From NCBI GenBank assembly GCA_002269645.1, contig NIVC01000384.1, positions 547,526 through 611,525 of the forward strand: a stretch of DNA of 64,000 nucleotides, given 5' to 3'. How positions within the stretch are numbered: position 1 is the stretch's first letter; each line of letters begins with the position of its first letter. The notes beneath the pieces were generated by a model that was given only the letters and a program-made list of their open reading frames with translations, made no database searches and was not told the origin of the DNA. The position numbers were made by a program, and so were the translations under genes. Origin of the DNA: Macrostomum lignano (Eukaryota). Positions 443 through 61,986 of this stretch are shown here, piece by piece.

Positions 443-1415
443 CTAAAGCTGCGTGCTGACCAGGACTCTCCTGGACACAGATCGGCACCGGTCAAAGGCA
501 GCGGTCGCAATGTTGTTGTTCAGCGCGGCCGTGGCTCGCTGCTGTGGCGTCGTCGGTCTCAGACAGCCGACAAGCTGCCTGCGGAAGGCCGAACTGCGAT
601 AGGCCAGCAGCAACCAGTTAGCACAGAGCTGGCAGACGATGACAGTCTCGCAGAAGTGGCACAGATGCGCCATCAACTTCAGCATATTCGGCTCCGTAGC
701 TGGATTGGCTGCCATGGCTTCTACAAGGGTTACAACAGCGAGGCAGGGCAGCGAACTAGCTAGGAGGGCTCCGGACAAGGCTAGGCACAGTGTGCAGCTT
801 CTCAGGCTGCCGTTCAGAGCCACAGGCGACACCGAGGTGCCTCTGATGTTCGATTCGGAGCCTAGCTCGGCGGCGAGCCTCTGACGACGGTGCTGCCGAA
901 TGAGGAGCACCCGGCGCAGCAGGGCCGCATTGGCCGCCAGGATGACCAACACGATCGCAGCCGGAGGGAAGTTCAAGCCAAAGCCCAGCAGGAGGTTCAG
1001 AGCCCTGCTAGGCGAGTTGGCCGTCTTCGAGCAGGCGATTCGCCCCGCCACCGTTGACCAGCCAGCCCTGATCGGCGCGTGCGTTGCTATGGCAACAGTT
1101 GTTAAGCTGACGTAGCAGCAGACTCGAACGGCGGCGCGTCGGCCTCGAGTGTAAAGTTGAAAGGGCCGGTGCATGGCCAGGACCCGATCGCAGCACATGG
1201 CGGCGAACAAGGCGTAGGCGGTCAGGCTGGTCCAGGCCTGCAGGAACTGGTCCACGCGGCAGGCCAAGTCGGAAGCGTTCCCAACGATCCAACCGGCCGA
1301 GCCGTTGGTGAGCCAGGGCAGGCCGCAGGGCAGGAGGAAGTGAAACACGCCGAACACGACGCCGACTGAGCAGTTTGCGGCGGAGATGGCGCTGAGGTAG
1401 ACAATCTGGCGGGAC
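443..1415 (-). CDS. GPCR-1 exon 2 (TM2-TM7 + C-tail); spliced protein 402 aa
   Basis: Acceptor tttaactaccgcctgcgcAG| at 1416. Six hydrophobic segments, CDRVLAMHRPF (DRY-like), TM3/ECL2 cysteines and a helix-8-like RSSAFRRQL. Exon lengths 236+973=1209 nt, divisible by 3. Confidence 0.9.
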
Positions 1416-1764
1416 CTGCGCAGGCGGTAGTTAAACGGCTTTCTTGAGCTACTCTGGTCTGGTAAACACATTTCTTTGATCGAGAGTTCTTGAAATGGAA
1501 ATATACGAGTAATTTTGATAAGAAGATGCAAATAACCTACACTAGGATTGTGTTATTAAGACAATCGGAGTACAAACGGATCGAATGTTGTGTCGATTGC
1601 CTCTCACAAACAGACAGAAGAAAATGGTAAATGCACTAAAGGAGGAAACTTCATTGACTTGTGAAGGGCCATTCTTAATTGATATGTGTCATCACTGAGC
1701 ACACCCTCCTTACTAGACATCTCAACAGGTTGATGCAAATAGACTACCAGCAGAGCTTTCTAAC

Positions 1765-2000
1765 CTAGAATCCTTCACGACTCTAACCAGCAGCAGTCTG
1801 GTTGCTAGCGCGTTGCCAGGCAGGCCCAGGAGCAGAAAGCCGATCAGAGGAACGCCGGCCAGGATACCCAGAGCAGATGCGGCCACGCAGAGCATTTGCC
1901 CGCTGCTGCTCGATACGGAAGAGTCACAGTCTCTTAACAGCGATTGAAGCGTTCTCAGAAATCTGCCACCGGACTCAACGCTGTCACTCGAATCGTTCAT
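1765..2000 (-). CDS. GPCR-1 exon 1 (N-terminus + TM1) of a rhodopsin-class orphan GPCR
   Basis: ATG at 2000. N-glycosylation sequon NDS and TM1 GILAGVPLIGFLLLGLPGNAL (GN motif). Donor AG|GTTAGA at 1765/1764. The phase-2 join to 1415 gives ...KDSRSRQIVYL, collinear with KERRTRQSVYL of the paralogs. Confidence 0.85.
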
Positions 2001-5000: not shown

Positions 5001-7765
5001 GTGGACGGGGCGGGTCGGAGGCCTCGTACAGAGTGGCAGGTCTTATCACTCCGGAAAATCATACGGGCGGCTGACAACCCCCGCACACCCTCTTAGTCAT
5101 TACCCGTTGAAAAGTCTTGTCCATCTCAAGGGTCTTATCGCGCAGCTGGCCTTGTCGCGCCTGAACTGGGCCTGGGGCAGACGGACAGAGCCCCACACAG
5201 ACCATATAAATGATAAAATATAGACCATTAAAGTGAAAAAAGTGGGCCATTTCCCCATGAGTCCCTGGTCGTGCCGTGTCAATTCGTGAAAGTGAGTCCT
5301 GCAGAACATAACTTCAGGCTTGTCTTTGTGCGCTATGTCAATCACAAGATAGACTTAGATAGAATAACTCGCGTTGGTTTGTTGCCAACAAGAATTTGTC
5401 GTTCAGAATAGGGATTGCAATCCCGGGATCCCGGGATCGCAAAAAAACGGGAATTTGCAATCCCTGCAATCCGCTTTTGCGTTCCCAAAAAACAAAGCTT
5501 TAGATATTACAAGGACTAACTGGACTAACTGGAAATTCAAAACACATCGTACTCCATATGTTTTTTTATCATGAAAGACAATAGTATGGGATTTTTCCTA
5601 GATCCCTACTATTCTCTCTTCCCCCAATTTTCCTCTTACCTGCTAGTTCATTCAGTCTACTAGCAGAACGAGCCTAGCATGCCTGGTCTGTTATCTGTTA
5701 TTGGCCTGTGCCTGTCCCCTGTCCCACACGGACTCTCAAGGCAAGGATTTCTCTATAGCTAGAACTAGAAGGTCCGGGTCCGAGTGCCTCCACATAAGAG
5801 TTGGTGGTCCAGCTACTAGATCTACATGTATATCTCTATGCGAGAACCAGCTCTGGCAATCTCCAATTGGCCCGCAGCCCCACCCAACCCTGTCTCTGAA
5901 GTGGCCTATATAACAAATTCCCACCCTCCTGCGAACCTATAGGCTTTTTCTCGAAACCCTGCTGTAAACATGTCCCGCCGCGCTCTGTCCACACTCTGGG
6001 TAAACAACCAACCAACCCTCCAACGAGTTGACATCCATCCATCGACGGGGATATCCCTGAACACATTATCTCCCTAGGTAGTGTGTGTGACGGTCCTGAT
6101 AATTGGCATAGTGAACAATACATGGCATAAGTTCCCGCTAGTAACGATAACGACTCTGAGATATTCGATTTACCCCTGGTCTAAGGCTTTGCTTTTGGTG
6201 GGGTCTCTAGCGAGACCCTCGATAACGCCTCCGGCCCAGTCTCTCCTACATCCCTCGCTGCGGGAGATCTTCTCCGATGACGACCAGTCTAGCGAGATTG
6301 CCGAGGCCCGACAGCACTTTGGCAGCATTGTCCAATCATTTTACAGCCGGGATATTGACTGGTTGAGGTCTCGGCACCCTGGTGGTCTGCCTACTCCTGA
6401 GACCTTTATCCAGGCCTTTGACCGGGCTCTCGATACTATATAGCCTCGAGGTCTGGCGGTCTGGTCGAGGTTCAGGAGGCCTAGACAGTGTACCAGGACT
6501 GGCTGATGGGCCGGAATTCGTATGCGGAAGACCCCGAGGCTACCTGGCTGGTCCTGACACGCGCCCGACTGCTTTGGTTACGCCCGACCTCGATTTGGTA
6601 AGTTGATTGCGAATTTCATATACGCTGCATATTTCCTATATTGAATACTAGCGAGTTTTACTATCTATCTAGCTAGAATACTAGCTAGTATTGAATACTA
6701 GCGTGAGACCAATACTTCAATATTGTTTACTTTAACAGTCGGTGGACTACCGATTCGTGTCCGACAGAAGATGAGGCTGCGTTACGACACTGCCCTGACG
6801 AAGCGAGGGGCGGACGGAGGAGGTTGTGATCGAGTTTGACAAGGGGTTGCGGCTGTCCTACATAGTTGTTAAAAGTATATAGTCCACTAGATTAATACAA
6901 TAATAGAAAAATGAGCTGTAAACCTCCCTTTTGCTTCCCCTGGCCCTAACCGCGCTTAATGTGTGAATTTGTGTCAGTATGCGCCAATATATGCTTAATT
7001 TTTACCTACTTTTGTTTCTATGTGCATTGTATGAGCTATCATTCTTAATTTTGTCTCAGTAATATACTTTATTTTCTGTAAAGTGGAAGGCCCTTTCTAT
7101 TTCTATTTTGTGCGAAAATACTTAAACTTCACGCACCTCATCAAAAACGATTTGTTTTTTTCTGAGAATGAAGTAGAAGGAGCATATACCGTGTATACTA
7201 CTGATAAGAAGGATAACCGAAGAAAAGCGAAGTAGATCTCGAAGCATGCATATAGAATACCGAAGGCCGTGAGCCTTTAATCTCGGGAACGCCCTGGACT
7301 GGAATATATACATGCAATAAATATACTATACTATAGCAACAGTAATATACCGCTCAGGCCTACAAATAACGCTACCAGTGCAGAGAGTAAGAACGCTACC
7401 AGTAACGAGTAAGGAATATACTTAGATATATACTCAGACCAAATACTTAGACCTATAGTTAGACTGATACTTAGACCTATACTACTATACTAGTAATATA
7501 TTTGGAAAGGTAATTATTAGCCATGCGCAAAAACCTTGTCTATAACGCTATCGTTTTGTAGGTCTTTGATAAAATGTCTTCTGGTCTTATTACAGATGAG
7601 ATCAGTAGGGAACTCGAAAAGCTGAGGTGGAGCTCAGAACCTCAAACAAGCTACGTGTAGTATAATTTTTTACGGACCAATCAGTGCAACCCGTTTGCAA
7701 TGCTCCCGTTTATAAACCAATGTCTCAGCTCAAGACAAATAATCTCTCCAAGTGAACACCTTGTC

Positions 7766-8294
7766 ATGGACAAACTAGGCAACAACCTGACGTCAACCGG
7801 TGGAGATGAGGCGGTCCAGGTGTTCAGCCAGTCTCTTATTTCTGCTTTGGAAATCTGCTGGACTGGCGGGGACTCCGCTTCCCGCCGCCTCCTGTGCGCT
7901 CTGTCCTCAGTACTCGGCATTCTTTCGGGCATCCCGACGCTCGTCGTCGTGCTGATTGGAGCGCCTGGCAACGCCCTGTCTGCCTGGCTGCTGCTCCTTC
8001 GAGCTCGCGCCAAGGAGCGCCGGACGCGCCAGAGCGTCTACCTGGGCGCCGCGTCGGCCGCGAACTGCGGCGCGGTGCTGAGCTACGGGCTGCTGCAGTT
8101 CTTCCTGCCCTACGGCCTGCCGTGGCTTAGCGGCGGCTCAGCCGGTCTGATTATCGGCGACGTGTCCGATGCTGCCTGTCAGACAGTCAGCTTCCTGATG
8201 GCCTGGCTGATCCTGCTGGCATATGGGCTGCTCACCGCAATGGCGTGCGACAGAGCGTTGGCCATGTGGCGCCCGTTCCGCAGTCAGCGGCTCG
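7766..8294 (+). CDS. GPCR-2 exon 1 (N-terminus, TM1-TM3)
   Basis: ATG 7766 (MDKLGNNLT, NLT sequon); an in-frame ATG at 7700 is an alternative start. GAPGNAL and CDRALAMWRPF motifs. Donor G|GTAATG at 8294/8295, phase 1. Confidence 0.85.
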
Positions 8295-8314
8295 GTAATG
8301 ACGCTTGGGAAACT
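7886..8314 (+). repeat. 429-bp inverted repeat, copy A (GPCR-2 TM1-TM3 + 20 nt of intron)
   Basis: Reverse complement of 15672-16100; four mismatches found by eye. Confidence 0.95.
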
Positions 8315-8370
8315 GCTCCAGCTGAGCTATCTGGTTCTTTAGATTGGGTTGCTCGGGGATAAGTGCTGTG

Positions 8371-8785
8371 TACTTGGTTTTAAATGAGTTTAATTGGTCC
8401 TTCATACATGTATTGTTTACCTGGTCTTTCATGTTGTTTACTTGGTCCTTCATGTTGTTTACTTGGTCCTTCATGTTGTTTACTTGGTCCTTCATGTTGT
8501 TTACTTGGTCCTTCATGTTGTTTACTTGGTCCTTCATGTTGTTTTCTTGGTCCTTCATGTTGTTTACTTGGTCCTTCATGTTGTTTACTTGGTCCTTCAT
8601 GTTGTTTACTTGGTCCTTCATGTTGTTTACTTGGTCCTTCATGTTGTTTACTTGGTCCTTCATGTTGTTTACTTGGTCCTTCATGTTGTTTACTTGGTCC
8701 TTTATATTGCCTACTTGGTTTTACATGAGTTTACTTGGTCCTTAAAGTTGTTTTCTTGGTTATAAATGAGTTTATTTGGTCCTGT
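8371..8785. repeat. 21-bp minisatellite in the GPCR-2 intron
   Basis: Unit tggtccttcatgttgtttact; homogeneous 8420-8705, degenerate edges. Confidence 0.95.
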
Positions 8786-9629
8786 TGTTTGACAACTCAG
8801 CCATCGGGTTATGAAGTTATGAAGCTTGCGTGATGTGTCAGGGACGTCAAGTGCAAACGTTAGAGCAAACGGAAACAGCTCATTAAAATTCTTTTTTGGC
8901 GGATGGCTGGAATCGATTGAGACTATCAGAAATGTCAGACTGTCTGCAGACTGTCAAACATGGGTAAAAAGGCGCTTTTGATTCTCTTTCAACTGAATCT
9001 GTCCACTACAGAAACTATACGTATGCATTCAAACTGCAGACTATAAATTAATTTCGAAGGCTGCTGTCCCTGTTAATCAGTTTACAGCCGTTCCATCGAA
9101 ATCAAACCCAACGCTCGGAGACTTATATGTGATTGAATACAGTGAGTGATTCGAGAGATAGATCCGCCGTCATGATCGATTTTTAGATGTCCATGGTTCC
9201 AGTCCAGTTTTAGGTCTTTTTTCCTGAGGCCTACAAGTAACTTTAACTGTGTGTACTGTGAAACTACCATCGAATTTTATGCAAGTCTACAAATCCGTGT
9301 ATATTGGAGAGTTCAGAGCACCTACGCAGACAATATGCTGGTTCGGGAAGTTGTTATGCAGGAAGTTTTTGATCTGCAAACAGACTTTATTGGCTTCGGC
9401 ATCATTTTACAGAAAAACGGTCTATAATGTAAATTATTTTTTCATTTTTACGAAAATTGACTGTCAGACATTTGACTGTCACAATTTGGCTGCACAAGTT
9501 CAAAATTAGTCAAACCATCGGCAGTCAAATAGCTGATAAAGATGTATCCCTTGTTTCTGGAGTTCCTTTTGAAGAATAAAAAATCAGAAAATGCCGCTTA
9601 AAAAGTGTCATTGAATGCTCACCTACCAG

Positions 9630-10252
9630 GTCGCGGATCGGCCATCCAAGTGAGCTCGTTGATCTCCCTGGCAACCGGAATCGTGGCCAGCTACGCCCTC
9701 GCTGTGACTCGCTGGACGAGTAGCAATTCGACATCCTGCTCAAAGAATCCGTTCGAATCAGCTGTCCCAGCCGGCTTCAATGTCTTCTATGGCATCTGGC
9801 TCGGCTTCCCACCGGCGCTGCTGGTGCTGAGCATATTGGCCGCCAACGCCACCCTCCTGGCTCGAGTAGTGCGGGTTCGCCGGATTCACCAGCAGCTGGT
9901 GGCCACAAATCGGTCGGGTCAGCAGAGTCAGGCGCGTTGCCGAGTCAGGATGCTGGGCAACAGCAGCATCCGGAGCAGCATGCTCTGTCTGGCCGTCTCT
10001 GGGGCCTCGCTGGCCATATCGCTACCGTGCGTCGCTATGACAACGCTGGCCTCCTCGCTCAGCCTGCGGCCCAGCGCAGACCCGACTCTGCTGCCTGCCG
10101 TCCTGCTGCTCTGCCACATCAGCGAGCTGCTGGTTGTGTTCCAGCTGTCAATCAGCTGGATGCTGCTGGCCTGGCGAAGCTCCGAGTTCAGCTGTCGGCT
10201 GCTTCGATGCCTGAACTGCCAGATGCATGCCGGAGCTGGAGCTAGTGGTTAG
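9630..10252 (+). CDS. GPCR-2 exon 2 (TM4-TM7 + short C-tail); spliced protein 383 aa from ATG 7766
   Basis: Acceptor ctcacctaccAG| at 9629. The phase-1 join gives RPFRSQRLGRGSAIQV, gap-free against GPCR-1 RPFQLYTRGRRAAVRV. Four TM segments homologous to GPCR-1 and GPCR-3. Confidence 0.88.
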
Positions 10253-10512
10253 AGCGTCGGACTCATGAATGAAAGGTCGGAGGTTCGATTCTAAACCCAT
10301 ATGAACAATCTGTGTCCTGAGCATTGCTTCAGTTCACCCAGCTGTAAAGTGGGTGCCAGCATTAGCTGGGATAATTGAGGGTGTGTGGAGACCCCCCAGT
10401 CCTTGGACTGAACAGCCGTTATGCAGCCTTCAGATGAGCCCGCGCCAAATAGCTGCGGCTGAGCTGTCGGTCGCACATCTGCCCGCAGGTGTAATCAATT
10501 ATTATTATTACT
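10232..10512 (+). mobile_element. tRNA-derived CORE-type SINE, copy 1 (internally deleted)
   Basis: A box (agctagtgg) and B box (ggttcgattc), body ttgcttcagttcacccagctgtaaagtggg, and an (ATT)n tail. Homologous to 58168-58479 and 61491-61757. Confidence 0.85.
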
Positions 10513-11699
10513 ATTGAAAAGTAGGAAAAGCCCATAAAGAACAGTTTGTACTGATTAATACAGTTCGATGAGCTAATAAACAAAACCCTTTTAAAGAGCC
10601 CGCGGGAAACTAACTTTCTGCTGCCCATTAGTGCAACGTATTCAAACATCTTAGTCTCAAACTATCCTATGCGTTCAATATAGCTGGTCGATAGTTGTAC
10701 GCAATAATGTACAGTCTAATGTACATGGAAAAAATCGTCCTCGACTGGAAAGGCTTTGCGTCGTGGATTGTGGATAGTCTATGGCCAGCCCTGCTGACCA
10801 CGCCGAATAAGAACGGATTTTATTAACTTCAGTGATCAATTCTTTCAAATTAATGAATTAATGGATAAATGATTCACAGTAAAATGAAAATTGGCGACTA
10901 CTGATAGCTAAAGTATATTGCAGCAATTAAAATATTTTTCGCGACAAGTGCTTATTGTGTACAATTGCGACAGAAGAAACTTATGAAGCTACTAAATAAA
11001 CTAATAACATTGAGAGCGTTAGTCAGTAAATATTCAATTGTAAGTTTATGAAATATATGTTTCACTTTCCTCCAAAAAAAGACGACGAACACGCGAGATT
11101 CAAAAGCTTAAAAAGTAAGCGTCGGGAAAAGTACGTTATTCTTTATTATTTACGCAAAAGATAACTTTACTGCATACAATAGTATGGAAATAAAATCATA
11201 AATTTGACTATACTACTCTCAAAGAAGTAGTATTAACCGTTTTGCCCTTTCCACCTAATTGGTTTATTTATTGAAACAGGCACACCGAGTGAGCAGGACC
11301 TTCTTATTGCCTTCGTCACTGTACGATCTTACCCGTCACTATTGTTGTACACTATGAATGAGAGAGTTTTCGAGTTATCTACAACTGGCAGTCGGACACA
11401 CTATTCTAGATTAGAGCAAACCAGCTTTTGACTTCTACCAGCTATAGAACTATCGACTTCAGTTTTCAATTAAGGATTAGAAACAAGTTCCATAGTAATG
11501 TGCTTTTCTTGCATTCCCTCACTTTCCCCACGCCTTTGCGACCCCACTGAGGGCTACTACTGTTGGTTTAGCAACCAGGTGTCTACCTAGTCTCCCGGAT
11601 AACACGTTTTCATAGTCTTTCAATACAATATTATCTGCAGTAATGTACTACGTAGACTACGTAGTTACTACGTTCGCACTTTAGGCGACTATTGTCGCA

Positions 11700-12005
11700 C
11701 AACCGTTGAGAGGCATTACTGACCATTCCGCCGACTCCCCTGAGCAAGCGCACAAGCGCGCGGATACGTACGCAGTCATACGCACAGGCACACACTCACA
11801 CAGGAGTGTACAGCGGCCCTAACTTTATTTATCGTTAGGCATGTACACCTAACTGTGCCTTGGGGGTTGGCCCCTATGGGCGTTAATTGCACGAGCAGAG
11901 CCAAGCCGAGATTCCAATTCAGCCCCAAGTTAATGTGACTGCACTAGGAATCGAGCCTGGGCTCCTGGCACATCAGAGCGCACCATTGGGCTGCGGCCTT
12001 CCCTC
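11700..12005 (-). mobile_element. Possible second tRNA-headed SINE-like element
   Basis: The minus strand has an A-box-like cagcccaatgg and a B-box-like ggctcgattcc (spacing shorter than a tRNA). The body 11723-11825 is related to 15528-15630. Confidence 0.35.
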
Positions 12006-12469
12006 AGGTTAGGTTGGGTATCAAGCTCTCCACTCCAACTCAGTCTTAGGCGTCAAGCAAGCTACCTAAAATACATGTATGCCAAATGTATCAACCTGCT
12101 GCTCATAGCAAGAGTACTAAAAAAGTGTAATATACTCAAGCCTAGCCATCAAGGCATGTATCTATTTCTGTTGTAGCACAGCACGACTCAAGGGATTATT
12201 GTACAGTGAAAGTGACGTTGTGCGTAAAAAACCGATGCATAGCTAAGGCGGGCTAGTCAACCCTACGAGTCAACCTCACTACCAACCAATCCGAACCTCT
12301 AGACGAGTTCCAGCGAATCACAGAGCGACGGCTAGCTCTGAAAGGAAACAAGGCCAAATGAACTCAAGCTTGTAAACATATCAACGTTTGAAGGCTGCGT
12401 AAATGAGTATAGTATGGGAGAAGGCTGGGGCAGAAGCGCTATACTACCGTCCAACAGACCAATCTGCTA

Positions 12470-13134
12470 TCAATCTAGCGACTTCTCCACAGCTGAGTTT
12501 CTTGTCGCTGTATCGCCACCGCCACTTCCTCCGCTGCTGACGGAGACGTCCTGACCACGGCGATGCAGCAAACAGGCCGTCAAATCTCGTCGGAACTCCC
12601 GACTGCGCCAGGCTAGCAGCAGCCAGCTGATTGACAGGTCGAAGACAATGAGCAGCTCGGTGATGTGACACACCATGATTACAGTTTCAAGCAGGGCGAG
12701 GTTCGACTCGGGGCTCACAGTGTACGTCATGACTGCGGTGGTCAGACAGGGCGCCGAGCTGATCAGGAGGGCGCAGGACATCGCTAGACAGACAGTGCAG
12801 CTGCGAACGGCGCTGTTAGCTGCTCCAGCCGCTGCAGCCTTGACCTGCGCCTGCATCAGCTCCTGTCGGCGTCGGCGGATGCGCACTACTCGAACCAGGA
12901 GGGCGGAGTTCGCCACCAGCATGGCCAGTATGAGCAGCACTGGCGGGTAGCCAAGCCCGATGTCGTAGAGGATGTTGAAACTGCTCATCCCGGAGTCTGA
13001 GCTAGCGTACTTGGCGCAGGACATCGACCCCGTGACCGGGTTGGCGATCCAACGGGTCGCGGCGAACAGATAAGCGGCCGTGGCAACGGTTGCTAGGCAG
13101 ACCAGCCCGCAGACTTTGTAGGCCACGCTGCTGT
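12470..13134 (-). CDS. GPCR-3 exon 2 (TM4-TM7 + C-tail); spliced protein 419 aa from ATG 16286
   Basis: Acceptor attcAG| at 13135. The phase-1 join gives RSQRLDSSVAYKVCGL, collinear with both paralogs. GYPP, SAPC and SISWLLLAWRSREFRR motifs match the GPCR-1/2 equivalents. Confidence 0.88.
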
Positions 13135-13149
13135 CTGAATATGGGGTGC

Positions 13150-15630
13150 GAGGATCGAATTAGTGGAACCCGACCCACCCGTATTACTGTTTGACGTACG
13201 CATAACATACCCATTTGACTAAGTGTTCAACCTGAAAGACAGAATACAAAACCATGATGTAACCACGCTCTGGTCGCGGGATAGGGCATGGGAACTTTTT
13301 CGAAAGTGCCTCCTATCCCGTGCACCCTCTGCACAGAGCTGTCGAGACTCGGCCAGGTCTCCGACCGGGCCTGGAGACTCCCGCTCTGCTGCACCCCTCC
13401 TGCTGCCTTGGTCCCGTCTCTCCTGCCGCCACACCTGCCTTTCCGGAGCCCCTACCCCTTTCTGTACCTCCCCCTCTACCCTATCTCTTCTGTTCCCGCC
13501 CTATTCTTCCTGTACTTTCTCTACCTCCTCCCTTTTTTTGTCTCCCTCTGCACTCTTTTCCTGCGCTGTCCCCTCTTTCCCTGTGTCTACTTACAGTACT
13601 TTGTGTGCTCACCGTCTCCCCATCCCCTCTCAAACTCCCAAACGGTGACGCAAGTCGTGTGACCCCTTCTCCCCCTCGGTGACTCATCGATGACTCATCC
13701 CCCTCTCTTGCGCAACCTTTTCTCACGCTATTGTTCTCCTTCCCAAATTTCTCATGTGACACCCACCCCACCTCCGCTTCTATTGTTCTCGTTTTTGCTT
13801 CTTTTGTTCTCTCGACCCCCACCAATTATCACATTTTCTCCGATTTTCTCTTTCTTTTGTTCTCGTTTTCGCACCTAATTATCACCTTTTCTCCAATGTT
13901 TACTTTTCCATTGTTCTCAGTTTTCCCCAATTATCCCCGATTTCCAATTCCTTTGTTCTCGACCCCAGCCCTATTGTTCTCAATGTTTGCTTGCGCAACA
14001 CTTTCGCGACCACCCGCTGCGCCAATTATCCCCCACCCCACCTCCGGATTGCGCAATTTCCCGATTTCTCATGTTGCTATGCCGGTCTCATGCTTCTCAT
14101 CATGACTCATTCTGACGTCATTCTGCCGGCAGCCAATCAGAGAGAGGGAGCCATGGTAACGACCTTGAGGAGGCGGCTGTGAGGTCTATAAAAGGAAGCG
14201 ATTTCGGCATGAGAATGCTCAACTGAGTTTATCTCTGTTCCTCTCCTCGTCCTTCTTTGGACTTGCTGTCAGATTGAGTTCTGACCCATTCGTCTATAAG
14301 ACGAATCCCTGCCGGTCCGCGGTCTGTTACCGCCAAGTTATCCTTAGCTCCCCAAGTGAGCTCGCCTATCGGCCAGCGGTCTGATACCGCCCAGCATCAT
14401 CAGCATCGCCTGATCTACATCAGCGCCTCGTCGCTCCAGCGCATCGCCGCTTCACCGTCTGCCTGACTGCAGCCTACAGCCGCCCTCGGTCACTCCGTCT
14501 CTCTCTCTCTCTGTGCAGCTGCCGGTAAGTTCCTGCTACTAATTTGTGCTCTAATTGCCTTTGCTTATCCGGGGTTTGCCTATTTTCCATTGTCTGATTA
14601 GAGAGCTGAGCCAATTGTGATACCGTATCTTTTGCTGTATTTTACTCAATAGTGAAGCCGCCTAATTGCCTACTTATTTGCCTAAGGGCCTAATTATTAA
14701 CTATTAACTAACTTCATCATTATTCAATCTTTCACCATCATTTCACTCATGGCTTGCCAAGCCTTTCTCCCGGGGTGGCAAAGCATAAGGAAGTTTGGGT
14801 AAGCTAATGGCCTCTCCCCGTGCAAAGCCCGCCTGTGAGTGCGTGCTGCGGGGCCGCGTGTGCGTGCAGTAGAGGGATTAGCGAGTCTTGGCACAGAATG
14901 GCAGTAGGAAGGTTGCAACCCCATGCTAACGCGTCCCTTCGCCCTGAGCAATCTAAACTGTAGACAGTACATGTTCGCCTCATACTACTCTTAGTAATCA
15001 AAGTCGCAAGTCAGCCTCGCTCACAGCCACAAAGGATCCCCTGCTGAGAAATCCTCCAGGATTGAGCCCAGAGTTCCCGATCATGCCCCAAGCAGAGTCC
15101 CTGTACTCGGCTGCATGCGTCTCCCCTGTTAGCCTAAATCCCCTGGTAACCAATCCAGGCGGGGCTCTAGCCTCGAGAGGTCTGGTAGAAAGATCCAGGT
15201 GCGCCAGGTCACATAGAGTGGTGGCAGCCACTCGGTCATACCATGACCGAGTGACCAACTATTGCACCTTGGCTACAGGTGGGGTCCATGTGGGTCCTTG
15301 GCCCTCTGGTCACGAAGCGCTACCAAAGCTACTAATCATGTGGGCGGGACAGTCTGGTGCTGGAGGTCCGTCAGGTCATTGCCCGGTCATAGGCAGCCTA
15401 CGGTCATTGCCCCCTCTAGCCATGCGTTCGTCTCTCTACGGAGCGGACAGGCGACAAGGGCGGTTACATCAACCAGATCCCCAAGTGTTTAGCATGAAGG
15501 CCAAAGGTCAAGCCAAAAGACGATTAGAAGTTAATAGGGCCGCTGTACATCATGTGTGAGCCTGATGAGTGCGTGCCTGAGTACAGTATTGGCGCGCTTG
15601 TAAATAAATGCTCAGGAGTCAGCGGAATGG
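13150..15630 (+). mobile_element. Probable retroelement-derived insertion in the GPCR-3 intron
   Basis: Long pyrimidine-rich tract (13430-14100), compact promoter-like module (14102-14194), strong donor at 14525 and AATAAA at 15603. The 3' block is shared with 11723-11825. No recognisable protein domain. Confidence 0.35.
14102..14194 (+). promoter_or_regulatory. Pol II promoter-like module (AP-1, CRE, CCAAT, TATA)
   Basis: TGACTCA 14103-14109, TGACGTCA 14113-14120, CCAATCAG 14133-14140 and TATAAAAG 14187-14194, in canonical order. Extra TGACTCA at 13680 and 13692. Confidence 0.5.
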
Positions 15631-15671
15631 GCGGATGCTGGTGCCCGCAGCCCTCCTACATGATGCCTGAA

Positions 15672-16100
15672 AGTTTCCCGAGCGTCATTACCGAGCCGCT
15701 GACTGCGGAACGGGCGCCACATGGCCAACGCTCTGTCGCACGCCATTGCGGTGAGCAGCCCATATGCCAGCAGGATCAGCCAGGCCATCAGGAAGCTGAC
15801 TGTCTGACAGGCTGCATCGGACACGTCGCCGATAATCAGACCGGCTGAGCCGCCGCTAAGCCACGGCAGGCCGTAGGGCAGGAAGAACTGCAGCAGCCCG
15901 TAGCTCAGCACCGCGCCGCAGTTCGCGGCCGACGCGGCGCCCAGGTAGACGCTCTGGCGCGTCCGGCGCTCCTTGGCGCGAGCTCGACGGAGCAGCAGCC
16001 AGGCAGACAGGGCGTTGCCGGGCGCTCCAATCAGCACGACGACGAGCGTCGGGATGCCCGAAAGAATGCCGAGTACTGAGGACAGAGCGCACAGGAGGCG
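15672..16100 (-). repeat. 429-bp inverted repeat, copy B (GPCR-3 TM1-TM3 + 20 nt of intron)
   Basis: Reverse complement of 7886-8314. Confidence 0.95.
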
Positions 16101-16286
16101 ATTCCAGTTGAGGTCATCTGGAGTGCCGCAATGGCTGTGAATGTCATACAAATGCCGGCCATTTTCATTGACTAGCGTTGAGTTTCCTCTGGCCTTAGCA
16201 ACTGTAGCTAGAGCTGTCAGACGGTGAATCGAAAACGCGGAATTTTTCGTCAAATCGAGCAGAAATTTGGCGCTTTGGAGACTCAT
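15692..16286 (-). CDS. GPCR-3 exon 1 (N-terminus, TM1-TM3)
   Basis: First ATG at 16286, NST sequon; the true start or an additional 5' exon is uncertain. 16100-15692 is nearly identical to GPCR-2 exon 1. Donor G|GTAATG at 15692/15691, phase 1. Confidence 0.8.
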
Positions 16287-16602
16287 CGGCGTTGCTAACT
16301 GGACCAACGTTTTGTTTTTTTCAACTAAAGTTCTCGAAATTTTTTATGAGTTATGAGATACTCGTATTTTATAAAAAAGCACGTTGAAGCAGTGTTTGAC
16401 TTCAAGTAGGCAATTGAAAATACTGCGCATGGCTGGCATGTGGGAGAGTGGCACCTGCAGTTGACAGCTTGTCACATGGAGCTATTCTTAACCTTTGCAA
16501 TCTGATAAAAAAGCTTCGTCTACCTCTGAAATTGGGGCAATATTTCGCTATATCGCTGCATTCGCAATGTTGCAATATTTCGCTGACATCACTACTTAGA
16601 GT

Positions 16603-18835
16603 ACGGCGTAAAAAACCCTGAAAAAAGAGTGTACAAAATGGATTCATTTTTCAAAGACAGTGTTCTAATTCTAAAGATGGTGTCCTACTCCTGAAGACGG
16701 TATCCTATTCCTAAAAGGTTGTGTCTCACTTCTTAAGATGGTATCCTATTCCTGAAGATATTCCTAAAGATGGTATCCTATTCCTGAAGATGGTGTCTCA
16801 TTCTTGAAGCTGGTGTCTCATTCTTGAAAATGGTGTCTCATTCCTGAAGATGGTGTCTCATTCTTGAAAATGGTGTCTCATTCCTGAAGATGGTGTCTCA
16901 TTCTTGAAGATGGTGTCTCATTTTTGAAGCTGGTGCCTCATTTTTGAAGATGGTGTCTCATTCTTGAAGATGGTGTCTCATTCTTGAAGCTGGTGTCTCA
17001 TTTTTTAAGATGGTGTCTCATTCTTGAAGCTGGTGTCACATTTTGAAGATGGTGTCTCATTTTGAAGATAGTGTCTCATTTTTGAAGATGGTGTCTCATT
17101 TCTGAAGATTCTGAAGATGGTGTCTCAGACGGCGTAAAAAACCCTGAAAAAAGAGTCTAAAAGATGGATTCATTTTTCAAAGACAGTGTCCTAATTCTAA
17201 AGATGGTGTCCTACTCCTGAAGACGGTATCCTATTCCTAAAAGGTTGTGTCTCATTTCTTAAGATGGTATCCTATTCCTGAAGATATTCCTAAAGATGGT
17301 ATCCTACTGCTGAAGATATTCCTAAAGACGGTATCCTATTCCTGAAGATGGTGTCTCATTCCTGAAGATGGTGTCTCATTTTTGAAGATGGTGTCTCATT
17401 CTTGAAGCTGGTGCCTCATTCCTGAAGATGGTGTCTCATTCTTGAAGATGGTATCCTATTCCTGAAGATGTTGTCTCATTCTTGAAGCTGGTGCCTCATT
17501 TTTGAAGATGGTGTCTCATTCTTGAAGCTGGTGTCTCATTCTTGAAGCTGGTGTCTCATTTTTGAAGATGGTGTCTCATTCTTGAAGATGGTGTCTCATT
17601 CTTGAAGCTGGTGTCTCATTTTTGAAGATGGTGTCTCATTCTTGAAGATGGTGTCTCATTTTTGAAGATGGTGTCTCATTCTTGAAGATGGTGTCTCATT
17701 CTTGAAGCTGGTGTCTCATTTTTGAAGATGGTGTCTCATTCTTGAAGATGGTGTCTCATTCTTGAAGCTGGTGTCTCATTTTTGAAGATGGTGTCTCATT
17801 CTTGAAGCTGGTGTCTCATTTTTGAAGATGGTGTCTCATTCTTGAAGCTGGTGTCTCATTTTTGAAGATGGTGTCTCATTTTTGAAGATGGTGTCTCATT
17901 CCTGAAGATTCTGAAGATGGTGTCTCAGACGGCGTAAAAAACCCTGAAAAAAGAGTCTAAAAGTTGGATTCATTTTTCAAAGACAGTGTCCTAATTCTAA
18001 AGATGGTGTCCTACTCCTGAAGACGGTATCCTATTCCTAAAAGGTTGTGTCTCACTTCTTAAGATGGTATCCTATTCCTGAAGATATTCCTAAAGATGGT
18101 ATCCTACTGCTGAAGATATTCCTAAAGATGGTATCCTATTCCTGAAGATGGTGTCTCATTCCTGAAGATGTTGTCTCATTCCTGAAGATGGTGTCTCATT
18201 CTTGAAGCTGGTGTCTCATTTTTGAAGATGGTGTCTCATTCCTGAAGATAGTGTCTCGTTCTTGAAGCTGGTGTCTCATTTTTGAAGATGGTGTCTCATT
18301 TCTGAAGATTCTGAAGATGGTGTCTCAGACGGCGTAAAAAACCCTGAAAAAAGAGTCTAAAAGATGGATTCATTTTTCAAAGACAGTGTCCTAATTCTAA
18401 AGATGGTGTCCTACTCCTGAAGACGGTATCCTATTCCTAAAAGGTTGTGTCTCATTTCTTAAGATGGTATCCTATTCCTGAAGATATTCCTAAAGATGGT
18501 ATCCTACTGCTGAAGATATTCCTAAAGATGGTATCCTATTCCTGAAGATGGTGTCTCATTCCTGAAGATGGTGTCTCATTCTTGAAGCTTGTGTCTCATT
18601 TTTGAAGATGGTGTCTCATTCTTGAAGCTTGTGTCTCATTTTTGAAGATGGTGTCTCATTTTTGAAGATGGTGTCTCATTTCTGAAGATGGTGTCTCATT
18701 TTGAAGATGGTGTCTCATTTTTGAAGATGGTGTCTCATTTCTGAAGATGGTGTCTCATTTTTAAAGATGGTGTCTCATTTCTGAAGATTGTGTCTCATTT
18801 TTGAAGCTGGTGTCTCATTCCTGAAGATGGTGTTG
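16603..18835. repeat. Higher-order satellite: four blocks, each a ~200-bp leader plus a variable 20-bp minisatellite array
   Basis: Leader acggcgtaaaaaaccctgaaaaaagag at 16603, 17129, 17929 and 18329; subunit tgaagatggtgtctcattct. Confidence 0.95.
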
Positions 18836-20022: not shown

Positions 20023-20350
20023 ATTTACTTACTTGACTCAGCTGTAGGGGATTCCAGGCATCCGGATGCAGTGGGGAGGCGTCGCCGCCCATTCCGCTAA
20101 CGTACCCTGGCGACCACGGGCAGCTGGTGCTGCGGTGTCGCGCAGGGAGATCCGGCGGTCCCCCACCTGGAGCCCTTAGGTAGCGGACGAGCTAGCAGAG
20201 ATTCTCGGGCCTGAAAACGTCGGTGGGGTCCGGGTTTGGGCAGAGGTAGGCGAGCCTGTCCTGTGTAAAGGCGGGGCAGTCACAGATGAAGTGCTCCGCA
20301 TTCTCGACACCGGAGAGGCAGAATGGGCATTCCTCGTTACCGATTTTTAC
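20023..20350 (-). mobile_element. 5'-truncated non-LTR retrotransposon (LINE) 3' end in the Ly6 intron
   Basis: The minus strand encodes KIGNEECPFCLSGVENAEHFICDCPAF..R, the CCHC zinc knuckle typical of LINE ORF2 C-termini. An in-frame stop is followed by LVRYLR, a 3' UTR and an aagtaagtaa tail. Confidence 0.8.
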
Positions 20351-20402
20351 CCTGGAAGTGACGATGTCTGGTAAAACAGCCATGTCCCAACCCCATGCGC
20401 AG

Positions 20403-20839
20403 TTTTCCCCTCGGACTCGGCCGGCGGCATCAGCTGCTTCCAGTGCCACTCGGTGAACAACTCGGACCCTACGTGTCACGACCCGTTCGACTCGGCTCTG
20501 CTCCCCATAAAGACCAGCATCTGCTCCGAGGGCCGGCGCGATCACCGAGGCAAGTTTCCTGGCCGGTACTGCTTCAAGATAAAAGGTAGACGAGCCTCCG
20601 ACGGAGTGGAAATCGTTGTTAGACGCTGCAGCGTTGACACATTGGTTGACAACACGTTGAAGAGTCACTACGGCCACTTCAAGATCGTCTCCGGCAACAC
20701 TACGGAGCAGTTCTTCGGCACCGTGTCGATGTGCCGCTTTGACGGATGCAACGCAGCATCGGCGCTGAGCTCAACCATCTGGCTGACCCTTGGTGCCGCC
20801 CTATCACTGCTCCTACGTGCAACTGGTTGCGGCTTCTAG
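20403..20839 (+). CDS. Ly6/uPAR (quiver/sleepless-like) GPI-anchored three-finger protein, exon 2; spliced protein 167 aa
   Basis: Acceptor cgcAG| at 20402. ISCFQCHS...TCHDPF, YCFK, RRC and the terminal DGCN motif, followed by small residues and a hydrophobic GPI signal (AASALSSTIWLTLGAALSLLL). Confidence 0.88.
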
Positions 20840-58081: not shown

Positions 58082-58167
58082 GTGAGCGGCTTTGTTAATT
58101 TTATTATTTGCCTTTGGGCACTGGTTGGTCAATTTTAGGACATTAAAAAACTGGTTTTGACAATTTC

Positions 58168-58479
58168 AATGATAATATAATAATTGATTGCACCTGCCCT
58201 AATGGGCAGATGGGCAACCGACAGCTCAGCCGCAGCTATTGCGCGGCGCATCTGAAGGCTGCGTACGGCTGTTCAGACCAAGGACTGGGGGGTCGCCACA
58301 CACACCCTCAATTACCCCAGCTAATGCTGGCACCCATTTTACAGCTGGGTGAACTGAAGCAATGCAGAGTTAAGTGTCTTGCTTGCTCAAGGACACAAAT
58401 TGTTCCGAGTGGGCCGGGAATCGAACCCCCGACCTTCAAGTCGTGATTCCAACGCTCTAACCACTAGGCTAAAACCCCC
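58168..58479 (-). mobile_element. tRNA-derived CORE-type SINE, copy 2 (most complete)
   Basis: The minus strand reads tagcctagtggttagagcg...ggttcgattccc with tRNA-like A-B box spacing, then gtgtccttgagcaagcaagacacttaactctgcattgcttcagttcacccagctgtaaaatggg (resembles MIR CORE) and an AT-rich tail. Confidence 0.88.
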
Positions 58480-59300: not shown

Positions 59301-59406
59301 GCTTGCCTGTAAGGAGCATCCCGACTGTCAGTTCATAAGTGCATGCTCACTTCTTTTCTCAAAGCACCTCGGTGACAGCTGTTCCGACATCGCTCCCAAA
59401 TTGCAG

Positions 59407-59723
59407 GCTGAGGATCCGGCAGCTCAGAGTGGCGGACTCGGGCAGCTATCGCTGCTTGGGCTCAAACCCAGCCGGCCGAGTCGACACCACCGGGTTCCTG
59501 ATTGTCTACCCAACCAGGCGACCCTCGCGTAAGGACGGCAAACATAAGCCGGATGCACCGTCTGACGTTGGAGGCGAGGGCGCCGAAGGAGACTCAGGAG
59601 CGGTGCAGACCGGCTTCTGCCAGCGCTTCAAACCGAACGTCTGCAGAGGATTTCTGGGCGGGCGAGACGTCTTTGTACGGTCGAATATGTTCCAGTTTAA
59701 CAAGGAGGCCGAACTGCTGCACC
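59407..59723 (+). CDS. Ror: ROR exon: end of Ig domain + start of Frizzled-type CRD
   Basis: Acceptor ttgcAG|. LRIRQLRVADSGSYRC (DxGxYxC), then GFCQRFKPNVC. Donor C|GTGAGT, phase 1. Confidence 0.9.
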
Positions 59724-60200
59724 GTGAGTTGTCTGGCTGTTGCTTGTTACAGCTGCTATTTGACAGAGAATGTCAACTTCTCAAAACCACCCTCAAACTG
59801 AACGGAATCTGAACTGGACTGTTCGACTCTCAAAATTGAGGCATCTAACAAACCAACGTCTTCTGACCTTAAAATAGGAAAAGAGAAAGAGGAAAAGTAG
59901 CCCTGTGCAATCCTGTGCAATCCTGTGCAATGATACTGCGAACAACCAACTCCATTGCAGAGCCTTAATTTAGGACATGATGAAGTTCCGAAATTCCTCA
60001 AATTCATTCCCAGGGGCTACAAAGACAGGGGTCACATGGGATGCTTTGGGCTCCGTTGTTTTGACCTCGTGCTCCATTTCAATGCCTAAATGAACAGCAC
60101 CATTCAGAGCGTTAAAAATAAATAAAAAACTTACCTAAGAGTTAAATACGACCCAGAAGGTTATCCACATCTCTCCATTGTCTTTTCACTCGCATCGCAG

Positions 60201-60452
60201 TGCTACAACGAATGGCGGACATAGTGAACGACACCGAGTGCACCCAGCCCGTCATGGAGACCCTGTGCCGATACAATTTTCCCGAGTGCCATCGACCGGT
60301 TTCCCCTGATGGCGCCGAGATTTTGGCGCCAATACCGCGGCGCCTGTGCCGAACCGACTGCGAGAAAGTGACTCAGCACTGGTGCCGTGAGAACTTCGAG
60401 AAACTGCGAGCGAGCTTTAGCTACTACCAGGAGAACACCCACTCAGACATTG
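60201..60452 (+). CDS. Ror: ROR exon: CRD core
   Basis: Acceptor atcgcAG|. ECTQPVMETLCRYNFPEC...RRLCRTDCEKVTQHWC. Donor G|GTGAGA, phase 1. Confidence 0.92.
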
Positions 60453-60529
60453 GTGAGAAATTTTCTAGCACAGAAGGAGTGCATTGTAGTCTTCTTTGAA
60501 TTTGACTGCTCAACCTGCTCTCATTGCAG

Positions 60530-61012
60530 ACTATCTGGGGCTGCTGCCCAACTGTGCGGCGCTGCCCGCCGAGACCACTCTGTGCGTCAGTCTGGCGCCG
60601 GAGCTGCAGTCGACGACTTCTCCGCCTCAGCTGCCTCAAACGTCAACACGCAGCAGGCCAGCTGTCCAAGGCTGCTACAACGCCAGCGATGCCACGGGCT
60701 ATCGTGGACCGGCCGCGCGTAGTCGCTCCGGTCGCGTCTGCCTACCGTGGAGCCTCGTGCCCGGCTACGGAGCCCTTGGCGACCACAACCAGTGCCGCAG
60801 CCTGCCCGTTGCTGGCCCGTCTCTGGGGGTCGCCGGGTCCGCGGCAACTCCGCCGCCACCGCCGCCGCCCTGGTGCTTCGTGTCCGGCGCGGGCGAATGG
60901 GAGGACTGCGGCCTGCCGCCCTGCTCGCAGCCGCCGCAGCCTCCACCGGCGCGACCAGTTTTCCCCAATACGCCTCCTCTGGTGAAGTCGCCGCCGAAGC
61001 GAGCTGGTGGCG
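60530..61012 (+). CDS. Ror: ROR exon: CRD end + kringle domain
   Basis: Acceptor cattgcAG|. LPNC...LCV completes the 10 CRD cysteines. Kringle CYNASDATGYRG...SGRVCLPW...HNQCR...PWCF...WEDCGLPPC. Donor G|GTAAGT. Confidence 0.92.
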
Positions 61013-61112
61013 GTAAGTTTGGACTCTACATGGTGCACTGCAATTCACATTTAGCATGGACACCGTTGACGTGTTTACAATTAAAAGAAAATTATTTGTT
61101 CCTCCATTCAAG

Positions 61113-61455: not shown

Positions 61456-61490
61456 GTGAGAAAAGCTTGACCGAAAACCCAGACTCATTT

Positions 61491-61757: not shown

Positions 61758-61986
61758 AGTTGTAGGATTTTTATTGAAGACTCAATTTGACCCTTATAGT
61801 GCTTGCTACGAACTAAATGCCATGGAAACATCCTGTAAGCTTGCCGTACAAGCCAATGTAGAACGTAGACGTCTCGTCTCGGGAAGTACATGCAGCGAGA
61901 ATCTCAGAGCTCTAGGAACCAAAATTCTATTGCATCCAAATCCCAATGCAGATTTAATTATTCCAAAACTTCTCTCCCACTTTCAG

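What the first reader, a model, noticed from the sequence alone, without database searches (positions are those of the whole stretch)
7886..16100. Convergent GPCR pair joined by a 429-bp near-perfect inverted repeat: possible invertible receptor-swapping cassette or exon-limited gene conversion
Seen: GPCR-2 (+) and GPCR-3 (-) face each other tail-to-tail. 7886-8314 and 16100-15672 are reverse complements with only 4 mismatches found (2 synonymous, 1 L/R, 1 intronic). The identity starts at TM1 and stops 20 nt into the intron, just past the shared phase-1 donor. The N-termini are unrelated and the TM4-TM7 exons are strongly diverged (very roughly 40% aa by eye). Both 3' exons lie inside the 7.36-kb interval between the repeats and both accept phase 1. 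Inference: one crossover between the repeats would invert 8315-15671 and swap which promoter/N-terminus is spliced to which TM4-TM7 half. That gives two new in-frame receptors from the same parts, a shufflon-like layout for a 7TM receptor. The conservative reading is recent intrachromosomal gene conversion homogenising TM1-TM3 while the ECL2/TM5-7 ligand-facing half diverges, which is itself notable.
Basis: partly seen in the sequence, partly recalled or inferred. Interest (0 to 1): 0.8.

Follow-up and report, generated by a model that had tools for sequence, protein, structure and literature searches.

The report
Gene-conversion island in flatworm receptor pair
Two old, tail-to-tail receptor genes of a Macrostomum flatworm keep their first three membrane helices almost identical by repeatedly copying a 429-base stretch from one to the other; this is a clean example of a well-known process, and nothing shows that the DNA between them flips.

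Summary
Window 7886-8314 and 16100-15672 are reverse complements, 429 nt with 4 mismatches and sharp edges. The repeat runs from the start of TM1 to 20 nt past a shared phase-1 donor in two convergent rhodopsin-class orphan GPCR genes (G2 +, G3 -). The organism is Macrostomum lignano or a sibling species. The rest of the two genes is old: dS 0.96 and 46% aa identity in TM4-7, against dS 0.018 in the tract.

A second copy of the locus (L001, M. lignano GCA_002269645.1) has the same 429-nt repeat with the same edges. At four sites G2 and G3 agree within a locus but differ between loci, and no site shows the orthologous pattern. With G1 as outgroup, three of those states are derived in the window. 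So at least one conversion of 278 nt or more occurred after the loci split, which means recurrent interlocus gene conversion.

The invertible-cassette reading gains no support. Both copies have the same orientation and no recombinase ORF was found. Ordinary repeat-mediated inversions that swap exons between inverted paralogues are already known (human AQP12A/B; a yeast flip/flop region). I rate it a new member of a known kind, of modest interest.

The parts
7886..8314 (+). Left arm of the inverted repeat (conversion island). It covers G2 codons 41-177, i.e. TM1, ICL1, TM2, ECL1, TM3 and proximal ICL2, plus the first 20 nt of the G2 intron.
15672..16100 (-). Right arm of the inverted repeat. 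It covers the same segment of G3 plus the first 20 nt of the G3 intron.
7766..8294 (+). G2 exon 1: ATG, 40-codon divergent N-terminus, then TM1-3. It ends in a phase-1 donor G|GTAATG.
   Evidence: the donor is conserved in L001
8295..9629 (+). G2 intron. It contains a 21-bp minisatellite at 8413-8760.
9630..10252 (+). G2 exon 2 (TM4-7 and helix 8). The frame is intact in both loci with no indels, but dN/dS is 0.79 between the loci.
10242..10520 (+). SINE-like repeat (tRNA-like head, ATT-rich tail). It supplies the last codons and the stop codon of G2 and truncates the G2 tail relative to G3.
12470..13134 (-). G3 exon 2 (TM4-7, helix 8 and a longer C-tail). It is under strong purifying selection (dN/dS 0.08 between loci).
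13135..15691 (-). G3 intron. It includes a 2217-bp element with terminal inverted repeats at 13255-15471, which is absent from the second locus.
15692..16286 (-). G3 exon 1: ATG, 62-codon divergent N-terminus (dN/dS about 1 between loci), then TM1-3. Same phase-1 donor as G2.
443..2000 (-). G1, the third paralogue, used as outgroup. It is 54-58% aa identical to G2/G3 in TM1-3 and 39% in TM4-7. Its intron lies in ICL1, and it has none at the G2/G3 position.

Best explanation
G2 and G3 are products of an old inverted duplication of a flatworm-specific rhodopsin-class orphan receptor gene. A 429-nt homology island is kept nearly identical by recurrent non-crossover interlocus gene conversion between the two inverted copies, which lie 5.7-7.4 kb apart on the same chromosome. 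The island covers TM1 to proximal ICL2 plus 20 nt of intron.

The likely mechanism (inferred) is this. A break inside one arm is repaired by synthesis-dependent strand annealing, with the other arm as template. Both ends of the repair must anchor in homologous sequence, so tracts cannot extend into the N-terminal coding sequence, which evolves about neutrally in G3 (dN/dS about 1), or into the indel-rich intron. The edges therefore stay fixed. The process sustains itself: identity permits conversion, and conversion restores identity. Everything outside the island has passed the point of no return.

The result is two receptors with the same TM1-3 half and different N-termini, ECL2/TM4-7 halves and C-tails.

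Shown here: the identity and its edges; the homogenised synonymous and intronic sites; the same island in a second locus; shared derived substitutions; a single orientation in both copies.

Inferred: the repair pathway, the direction of transfer, and that both genes are functional receptors.
For: 1. dS is 0.018 in the tract and 0.96 in TM4-7. Third codon positions are 98.5% identical and 19 of 20 intron bases match, so the identity does not come from selection on the protein.

2. In TM4-7, G2 and G3 are about as far from each other (44-46% aa) as each is from G1 (39%). The duplication is therefore old.

3. The second locus, L001 (M. lignano NIVC01000376.1), has the same 429-nt inverted repeat with the same edges.

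4. Four-way comparison of the arms: 4-5 differences within a locus, 8-9 between loci. Four sites show window G2 = window G3, different from L001 G2 = L001 G3. No site shows the orthologous pattern.

5. G1 polarises three of those sites (7904, 8128, 8181). The window state is derived and present in both paralogues, so a conversion of at least 278 nt occurred after the loci split.

6. Orthologous dS between the loci is 0.035-0.054 in every segment, about twice the paralogous tract dS of 0.018-0.026.

7. All four coding sequences are intact and the splice sites are conserved.

8. Precedents: conversion between adjacent inverted paralogues limited to part of an ORF and reaching into introns (PMC3966223); Drosophila Hsp70 and Amy palindromic pairs (PMC3924832).
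Against: Only two copies of the locus could be examined, and how they relate is not established. They may be homeologous subgenomes, different strains or sibling species.

The polarisation rests on three sites and an outgroup that is only about 71% identical in DNA.

I found no transcript evidence for the two-exon models. The only annotated protein (PAA84399.1) reads through the G2 donor into the intron.

How the first conversion got started between sequences whose neighbours are now unalignable cannot be reconstructed.
Confidence: 0.88

Rival explanations
1. Recurrent or polymorphic inversion (flip-flop). Crossovers between the arms invert 8315-15671 and exchange which promoter and N-terminus is joined to which TM4-7 half. 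Different chromosomes, subgenomes or cells would then carry different receptor chimeras. The strong form is a programmed, shufflon-like switch.
For: The geometry allows it. Both 3' exons lie inside the interval and both introns are phase 1, so both chimeras are in frame. The arms hold perfect-match runs of up to 174 nt. Conversion and crossover are alternative outcomes of the same repair (PMC3924832). Natural precedents exist: the yeast 24-kb flip/flop region between homogenised paralogous genes (PMC9731477), and human HsInv0241, which swaps exon 1 of AQP12A and AQP12B (PMC3961182).
Against: Both available copies have the same orientation at all four junctions, even though at least one conversion has occurred since they split. 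No ORF in the interval matches a recombinase or transposase family. At 429 nt the repeat is shorter than those behind known polymorphic inversions, which run from 0.8 to 13 kb in the human set, and yeast uses 4 kb. Nothing points to a programmed mechanism.
Confidence: 0.07
2. A single, one-off replacement of one gene's TM1-3 segment by the other's (one conversion or template-switch event), with no exchange since.
For: A single event would also give a sharp-edged block of high identity.
Against: The island and its exact edges predate the split of the two loci, yet three to four later substitutions are shared by both paralogues of one locus only. Within-locus tract dS is about half the between-locus dS. 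At least two rounds of exchange are needed.
Confidence: 0.03
3. Assembly or polishing artefact: cross-mapped reads homogenised two similar segments, or a chimeric read created a false palindrome.
For: The M. lignano genome is hard to assemble. It holds three near-identical subgenomes, and 93% of read pairs map to multiple loci (PMC10733133).
Against: The same island occurs in two separately assembled copies that differ by 2-7% around it. Each arm has private differences, and the shared variants are locus-specific. Cross-mapping among all six or so arms would blur that pattern, not create it. A false palindrome would mirror everything, not a 429-nt patch inside diverged genes.
Confidence: 0.02

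Closest known systems
Concerted evolution of adjacent inverted ('palindromic') gene pairs by ectopic gene conversion: Drosophila Hsp70Aa/Ab and Amy-p/Amy-d, C. elegans hsp16 and hsp70 pairs (PMC3924832, PMC3966223)
   Same: Closely linked inverted paralogues. Paralogues within a genome are more alike than orthologues between genomes. Homogenisation is confined to coding sequence or part of it, sometimes reaching into introns, while the flanks evolve independently. Crossover would give an inversion.
   Different: In those cases the whole coding region is homogenised and the two genes stay functionally equivalent. Here only 429 nt (about one third of the CDS) is homogenised, the pair is tail-to-tail, and the other two thirds are at saturation divergence. 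The products are mosaics.
Domain-limited gene conversion between GPCR paralogues: CCR2/CCR5 in mammals (PMC8877049, PMC2720389)
   Same: Rhodopsin-class receptors. Repeated independent conversions affect only part of the 7TM protein and produce chimeric receptors.
   Different: The cited papers place no emphasis on an inverted arrangement for CCR2/CCR5, and I did not check their orientation. The bat tracts always include extracellular domains and vary between lineages. Here the tract has fixed edges, is shared by both loci, and ends in an intron.
Inverted-repeat-mediated inversion polymorphisms maintained by homogenisation: the yeast chrXIV flip/flop region (PMC9731477) and human HsInv0241, which exchanges exon 1 of AQP12A/AQP12B (PMC3961182)
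   Same: The inverted repeats are paralogous gene sequences kept identical by conversion. A crossover inverts the spacer and, in HsInv0241, swaps exons between the two genes.
   Different: In those systems both orientations have been observed, and the repeats are 0.8-13 kb. Here only one orientation is seen (two copies) and the repeat is 429 nt.
Bacterial shufflons and phase-variable hsdS inversion systems (from general knowledge, not tested here)
   Same: Inverted repeats inside coding sequence allow an inversion to re-pair the 5' and 3' halves of a protein.
   Different: Those systems need a dedicated site-specific recombinase and short defined sites. Neither is present here, and this is a eukaryotic nuclear locus with introns.

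Membership tests
Interlocus (ectopic) gene conversion / concerted evolution | A block of paralogue identity far above that of the flanking homologous sequence, with sharp edges | tested here: met
   99.1% over 429 nt against 59% in the 3' exons and random identity in the immediate flanks. P is about 1e-90.
Interlocus (ectopic) gene conversion / concerted evolution | Silent sites (synonymous and intronic) are homogenised as well, which excludes selection on the protein | tested here: met
   Tract dS 0.018 against 0.96 in TM4-7. 19 of 20 intron bases are identical.
Interlocus (ectopic) gene conversion / concerted evolution | Paralogues within a genome copy are more alike than orthologues between copies, with shared derived substitutions | tested here: met
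   4-5 differences within a locus against 8-9 between loci. Four sites show the within-locus-shared pattern and none the orthologous pattern. Three are polarised as derived by G1.
Interlocus (ectopic) gene conversion / concerted evolution | Polymorphisms shared between the paralogues in a population sample | not testable with these tools
Programmed DNA inversion switch (shufflon / invertase type) | A site-specific recombinase encoded at or near the locus | tested here: not met
   No ORF of 50 aa or more in the part of the interval listed at that cut-off (10250-12470) resembles a recombinase. Seven ORFs inside the interval, one in the left arm and intron, and one upstream were scanned against Pfam. 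None matched a recombinase or transposase family; the only hits were spurious coiled-coil matches from a minisatellite ORF. Nothing recombinase-like stood out among the window's ORFs of 110 aa or more, though most of those were read by eye and not scanned.
Programmed DNA inversion switch (shufflon / invertase type) | Both orientations coexist | tested here: not met
   The window and L001 are collinear at all four arm junctions. This rests on two copies only, so it is weak.
Inversion polymorphism by non-allelic homologous recombination between inverted repeats | Highly identical inverted repeats flank the segment | tested here: met
   429 nt, 99% identical, longest perfect run 174 nt, spacer 7357 nt in the window and 5719 nt in L001.
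Inversion polymorphism by non-allelic homologous recombination between inverted repeats | The inverted arrangement is observed in some chromosomes | tested here: inconclusive
   Zero of two copies are inverted. No further copies could be retrieved.
Rhodopsin-class (family A) GPCR, flatworm orphan clade | Match to the 7tm_1 profile and a 7TM layout with the class A landmarks | tested here: met
   Pfam 7tm_1: G2 31.7 bits and G3 39.8 bits, cut-off 30.5. G1 scores 29.7, just below. Hydropathy peaks mark TM1 and TM3-7, and TM2 is weaker. GN in TM1, C-D-R at the end of TM3, W in TM4 and P in TM5/TM6 were read from the sequence.
Rhodopsin-class (family A) GPCR, flatworm orphan clade | The nearest relatives are platyhelminth orphan receptors | tested here: met
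   The best hits are M. lignano proteins. More distant named hits are 'rhodopsin orphan GPCR' of Echinococcus and proteins of Anoplocephala and Opisthorchis. Whether this is the published PROF1 family was not tested.

The most novel reading that the evidence does not exclude
The homology island also serves as a substrate for occasional crossovers. Somewhere among the three subgenomes, or in natural populations of Macrostomum, the 7.4-kb interval would then exist in both orientations. Four different receptors (two N-terminus/promoter halves times two TM4-7 halves) would be drawn from two genes, as a eukaryotic flip-flop that shuffles GPCR halves. A programmed somatic version of this is much less likely (about 0.01).
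Probability: 0.08. Interest if true: 0.6.

Novelty: new member of a known kind. Interest (0 to 1): 0.3.

Why it matters
This is an unusually clean natural example of mosaic concerted evolution. One third of a receptor gene stays locked to its paralogue while the other two thirds have diverged to saturation. The same island edges are preserved in two copies of the locus.

It shows how conversion can tie a fast-evolving copy to a constrained one. Between the loci, G2 TM4-7 has dN/dS 0.79 and G3 TM4-7 has 0.08.

It also carries practical warnings:
- Trees and duplication dates for such flatworm GPCRs will be wrong if built from TM1-3.
- Short reads and primers in this segment cannot tell the two genes apart, nor the three subgenomes.
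- The public annotation of the gene is truncated at the intron.

It does not open a new mechanism.

Tried and rejected
- Homologue search with full-length G2 in the word-indexed 5.8-billion-protein collection: no hits.
- The exhaustive HMMER search with G3 was needed to find PAA84399.1 and so identify the organism.
- Exact look-ups of window-encoded ORFs (the G1 ORF and the G2 exon-1 read-through ORF): not on record.
- Search with P0001 for further alleles or homeologues: it found only itself.
A third copy of the locus could not be obtained.
- Pfam scan of ORFs in and around the interval for a recombinase or transposase: nothing.
- tRNA scan of the whole window and Rfam scan of 6000-18000: nothing. 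The tRNA-like head of the SINE is too degenerate.
- Paper search for the gene identifier Mlig016690: no paper.
- Rejected, selection on the nucleotide sequence as the cause of identity: it cannot produce parallel synonymous changes in both paralogues of one locus.
- Rejected, a mobile element as the nature of the repeat: the arms are in-frame receptor coding sequence homologous to G1.
- My first coordinates for the G1 window-versus-L001 dN/dS were out of register, and that line should be ignored. tblastn gives 98.1% aa identity.
Full report
OBSERVATION. The arms are 7886-8314 and 15672-16100, 429 nt, 99% complementary, 7357 nt apart. Base-by-base comparison finds four mismatches: 7966 T/C and 8173 T/A (synonymous), 7998 T/G (Leu/Arg) and 8306 T/C (intron). 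Identity collapses to random level immediately outside both ends. A sensitive blastn of the two halves of the locus finds nothing else apart from two short patches in the 3' exons, at 75% and 85%. Against the 59% identity of the 3' exons, 425/429 matches has a probability of about 1e-90.

GENE MODELS. G2 (+) is 7766-8294 | 9630-10252 (383 aa). G3 (-) is 16286-15692 | 13134-12470 (419 aa). Both have a phase-1 donor G|GTAATG after '...RPFRSQRL' in intracellular loop 2, and a cag| acceptor. Both pass the Pfam 7tm_1 gathering score. The tract runs from the first residue of TM1 through TM3 and the C-D-R (DRY-like) motif to 20 nt inside the intron. A third paralogue, G1 (443-2000, -), has its intron in ICL1 and none at the G2/G3 position. 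The genes are convergent and their 3' ends are 2.2 kb apart. This follows automatically for any pair of paralogues that share an intron phase.

HOW OLD ARE THE GENES, AND HOW YOUNG IS THE TRACT? Between G2 and G3 the tract has dN 0.003 and dS 0.018. TM4-7 has dN 0.50, dS 0.96 and 46% aa identity. The N-termini align no better than chance. In TM4-7, G2 and G3 are about as far from each other (44-46% aa) as each is from G1 (39%). In TM1-3, G1 is 54-58% identical to them. So the duplication is old. TM1-3 is the more conserved half of this family in any case, and the near-identity includes synonymous and intronic sites. Selection on the protein cannot explain that.

ORGANISM AND SECOND LOCUS. The word-indexed protein search found nothing. 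An exhaustive HMMER search with G3 found P0001, which is PAA84399.1 of Macrostomum lignano, and further M. lignano GPCRs. More distant named relatives are flatworm 'rhodopsin orphan GPCRs'. P0001 is the G2 exon-1 ORF read through into the intron, and it comes from a different copy of the locus. Its contig region (L001; GCA_002269645.1, NIVC01000376.1:607036-627632) is collinear with the window and 80-97% identical by blastn segment, lowest across the minisatellite-rich stretch upstream of G3. L001 contains G1, G2 and G3, all intact and with conserved splice sites. It also has the same 429-nt inverted repeat, 99% complementary, with the same edges and a 5719-nt spacer. The spacer differs from the window's because of insertions. 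A 2217-bp element with terminal inverted repeats lies in the G3 intron of the window only, and a 650-bp hairpin element lies in L001 only. Non-coding divergence between the two loci is 4.5-7% substitutions with about 10-12 indel events per kb. This resembles the relation among the three homeologous subgenomes described for M. lignano, although it is above the published genome-wide average (PMC10733133). A sibling species cannot be excluded.

THE DECISIVE TEST. In the four-way alignment of the arms, window G2 and window G3 differ at 4 sites, L001 G2 and L001 G3 at 5, and any window arm from any L001 arm at 8-9. There are 13 variable sites. Nine are private to one arm. Four (7904, 7945, 8128, 8181) show window G2 = window G3, different from L001 G2 = L001 G3. 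None shows the orthologous partition G2=G2, different from G3=G3. Just outside the tract the partition is entirely by gene. G1 can be aligned at three of the four sites, and in each case L001 has the outgroup state while both window paralogues share the derived state. So, after the two loci separated, at least one conversion spanning 7904-8181 or more (at least 278 nt) copied new substitutions from one paralogue to the other in the window's lineage. The island and its exact edges already existed before that split. In agreement, orthologous dS is 0.035-0.054 in all segments, about twice the paralogous dS inside the tract (0.018 in the window and 0.026 in L001). This is recurrent interlocus gene conversion, that is, concerted evolution confined to a homology island.

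MECHANISM (INFERRED). A double-strand break within one arm is repaired from the other arm on the same chromatid or the sister chromatid, by synthesis-dependent strand annealing. Invasion and re-annealing both need homology, so tracts cannot leave the island. To the left lies N-terminal coding sequence that evolves about neutrally in G3 (dN/dS about 1; 9 non-synonymous to 3 synonymous changes). To the right lies intron with a high indel rate. Three of the nine private differences fall in the last 10 nt at the intronic edge. That is what edge erosion of such an island would look like, although faster neutral change in intron would also produce it.

THE TWO GENES ARE NOT EQUIVALENT. Between the loci, G3 TM4-7 has 2 non-synonymous and 9 synonymous changes (dN/dS 0.08). 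G2 TM4-7 has 14 and 6 (dN/dS 0.79; Fisher p = 0.009). The stop codon of G2 lies inside a SINE-like repeat that shortened its C-tail before the loci split. Even so, G2 exon 2 has no indel in 623 nt where about 6-7 would be expected at the non-coding rate. Its frame is therefore still maintained, and G2 is evolving under relaxed or diversifying selection and is not a dead gene. Conversion ties its TM1-3 half to the strongly constrained G3.

THE INVERTIBLE-CASSETTE READING. Both copies of the locus have the same arrangement at all four junctions. No ORF in the interval matches a recombinase or transposase family. The repeat is ordinary coding sequence and not a short recombinase site. Crossover is the alternative outcome of the same repair (PMC3924832), so a rare inversion by non-allelic homologous recombination is possible. 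Two copies cannot exclude a polymorphism. The idea is also not new in kind. The yeast chrXIV flip/flop region inverts between 4-kb repeats made of paralogous genes kept identical by continual homogenisation (PMC9731477). Human HsInv0241 exchanges the first exons of the inverted paralogues AQP12A and AQP12B (PMC3961182). The repeats in those cases are 0.8-13 kb, longer than the 429 nt here.

ARTEFACT? A polishing or collapse artefact is unlikely. The island appears in two separately assembled, diverged copies. Each arm has private variants, and the shared variants are locus-specific. Cross-mapping of reads among all arms of all subgenomes would erase that pattern.

COMPARISON WITH KNOWN CASES. 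The closest known cases are the concerted evolution of adjacent inverted gene pairs (Drosophila Hsp70 and Amy; C. elegans hsp16 and hsp70 pairs; PMC3924832, PMC3966223) and domain-limited conversion between GPCR paralogues (CCR2/CCR5; PMC8877049, PMC2720389). This case differs in degree. Only about a third of the coding sequence is homogenised, the edges are stable across two loci, one edge lies in an intron, and the rest of the genes is at saturation divergence.

VERDICT. The conservative interpretation is demonstrated and extended to recurrent conversion. The shufflon-like interpretation is unsupported. I rate it a new member of a known kind, with interest about 0.3.

Noticed in passing
window 10242-10520; other copies at 58164-58467 (-) and 61491-61744 (-); L001 12378-12681: A SINE-like repeat of about 280 nt with a tRNA-like head and an ATT-rich tail. 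The G2 stop codon (10250-10252) lies inside it, so the insertion shortened the G2 C-tail by about 36 residues relative to G3. The repeat is present in both loci and therefore older than their split. ARAGORN and Rfam do not recognise the head.
   Followed up: partly
window 13255-15471 (G3 intron): A 2217-bp insertion bounded by 15-nt imperfect terminal inverted repeats (TGATGTAACC... / ...GGTTACATCA). L001 has the empty site. There is no coding capacity recognisable by Pfam and no other copy in the window.
   Followed up: partly
L001 14286-14937: A hairpin element of about 650 bp (254-nt arms, 98% complementary, 144-nt loop) sits in the G2-G3 intergenic region of the second locus and is absent from the window.
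   Followed up: no
window 9630-10252 versus 12470-13134, compared with L001: The two 3' halves are under very different constraint between the loci. G2 has 14 non-synonymous and 6 synonymous changes (dN/dS 0.79). G3 has 2 and 9 (dN/dS 0.08). Fisher p = 0.009. G2 still has no indels in 623 nt.
   Followed up: yes
L001 10001-10597 (PAA84399.1, BOX15_Mlig016690g1): The only public annotation of this gene is a 198-aa model that reads through the exon-1 donor into the intron. G1 and G3 are not annotated at all in that contig. Several other flatworm family members in the databases also look like exon-1-only fragments (P0027 of 140 aa, P0010 of 222 aa).
   Followed up: partly
protein P0012 (Anoplocephala perfoliata KAM7539016.1): A distant family member from a tapeworm has two consecutive TM1-3 modules in one predicted protein. 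This suggests that the TM1-3 exon is duplicated, or is a neighbouring-gene fragment, there too.
   Followed up: no
window 443-2000 (-): G1 has its intron in intracellular loop 1 and none in loop 2. G2 and G3 have the opposite pattern. G2 and G3 therefore share a gene structure that sets them apart from G1.
   Followed up: partly
window 8413-8760, 16660-18833, and around 35.3, 36.6, 39.5-40.1, 45.1-45.5, 49.6-50.3, 52.3-53.6, 54.8-55.6 and 56.9-57.3 kb: The window is packed with minisatellite arrays. Examples are the 21-mer in the G2 intron and the 2-kb array of 20-mers just upstream of G3. They create long spurious ORFs on both strands, and their copy number differs between the two loci.
   Followed up: no
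window 59339-63000 (+): A ROR-family receptor tyrosine kinase gene. The kinase exon at 62075-62983 best matches human ROR1 (6tu9, E = 4.6e-76) and ROR2. Ig-like and faint kringle signals lie upstream.
   Followed up: partly
window 20453-20839 (+) and 20192-20677 (-): A Quiver/Ly6-type (QVR) ORF lies next to G3 and matches the QVR gene annotated at the end of L001. It is overlapped on the other strand by a retroelement-like ORF whose peptide (EECPFCLSGVENAEHFIC...) also occurs inside a chimeric 2481-aa M. lignano gene model (P0002).
   Followed up: no
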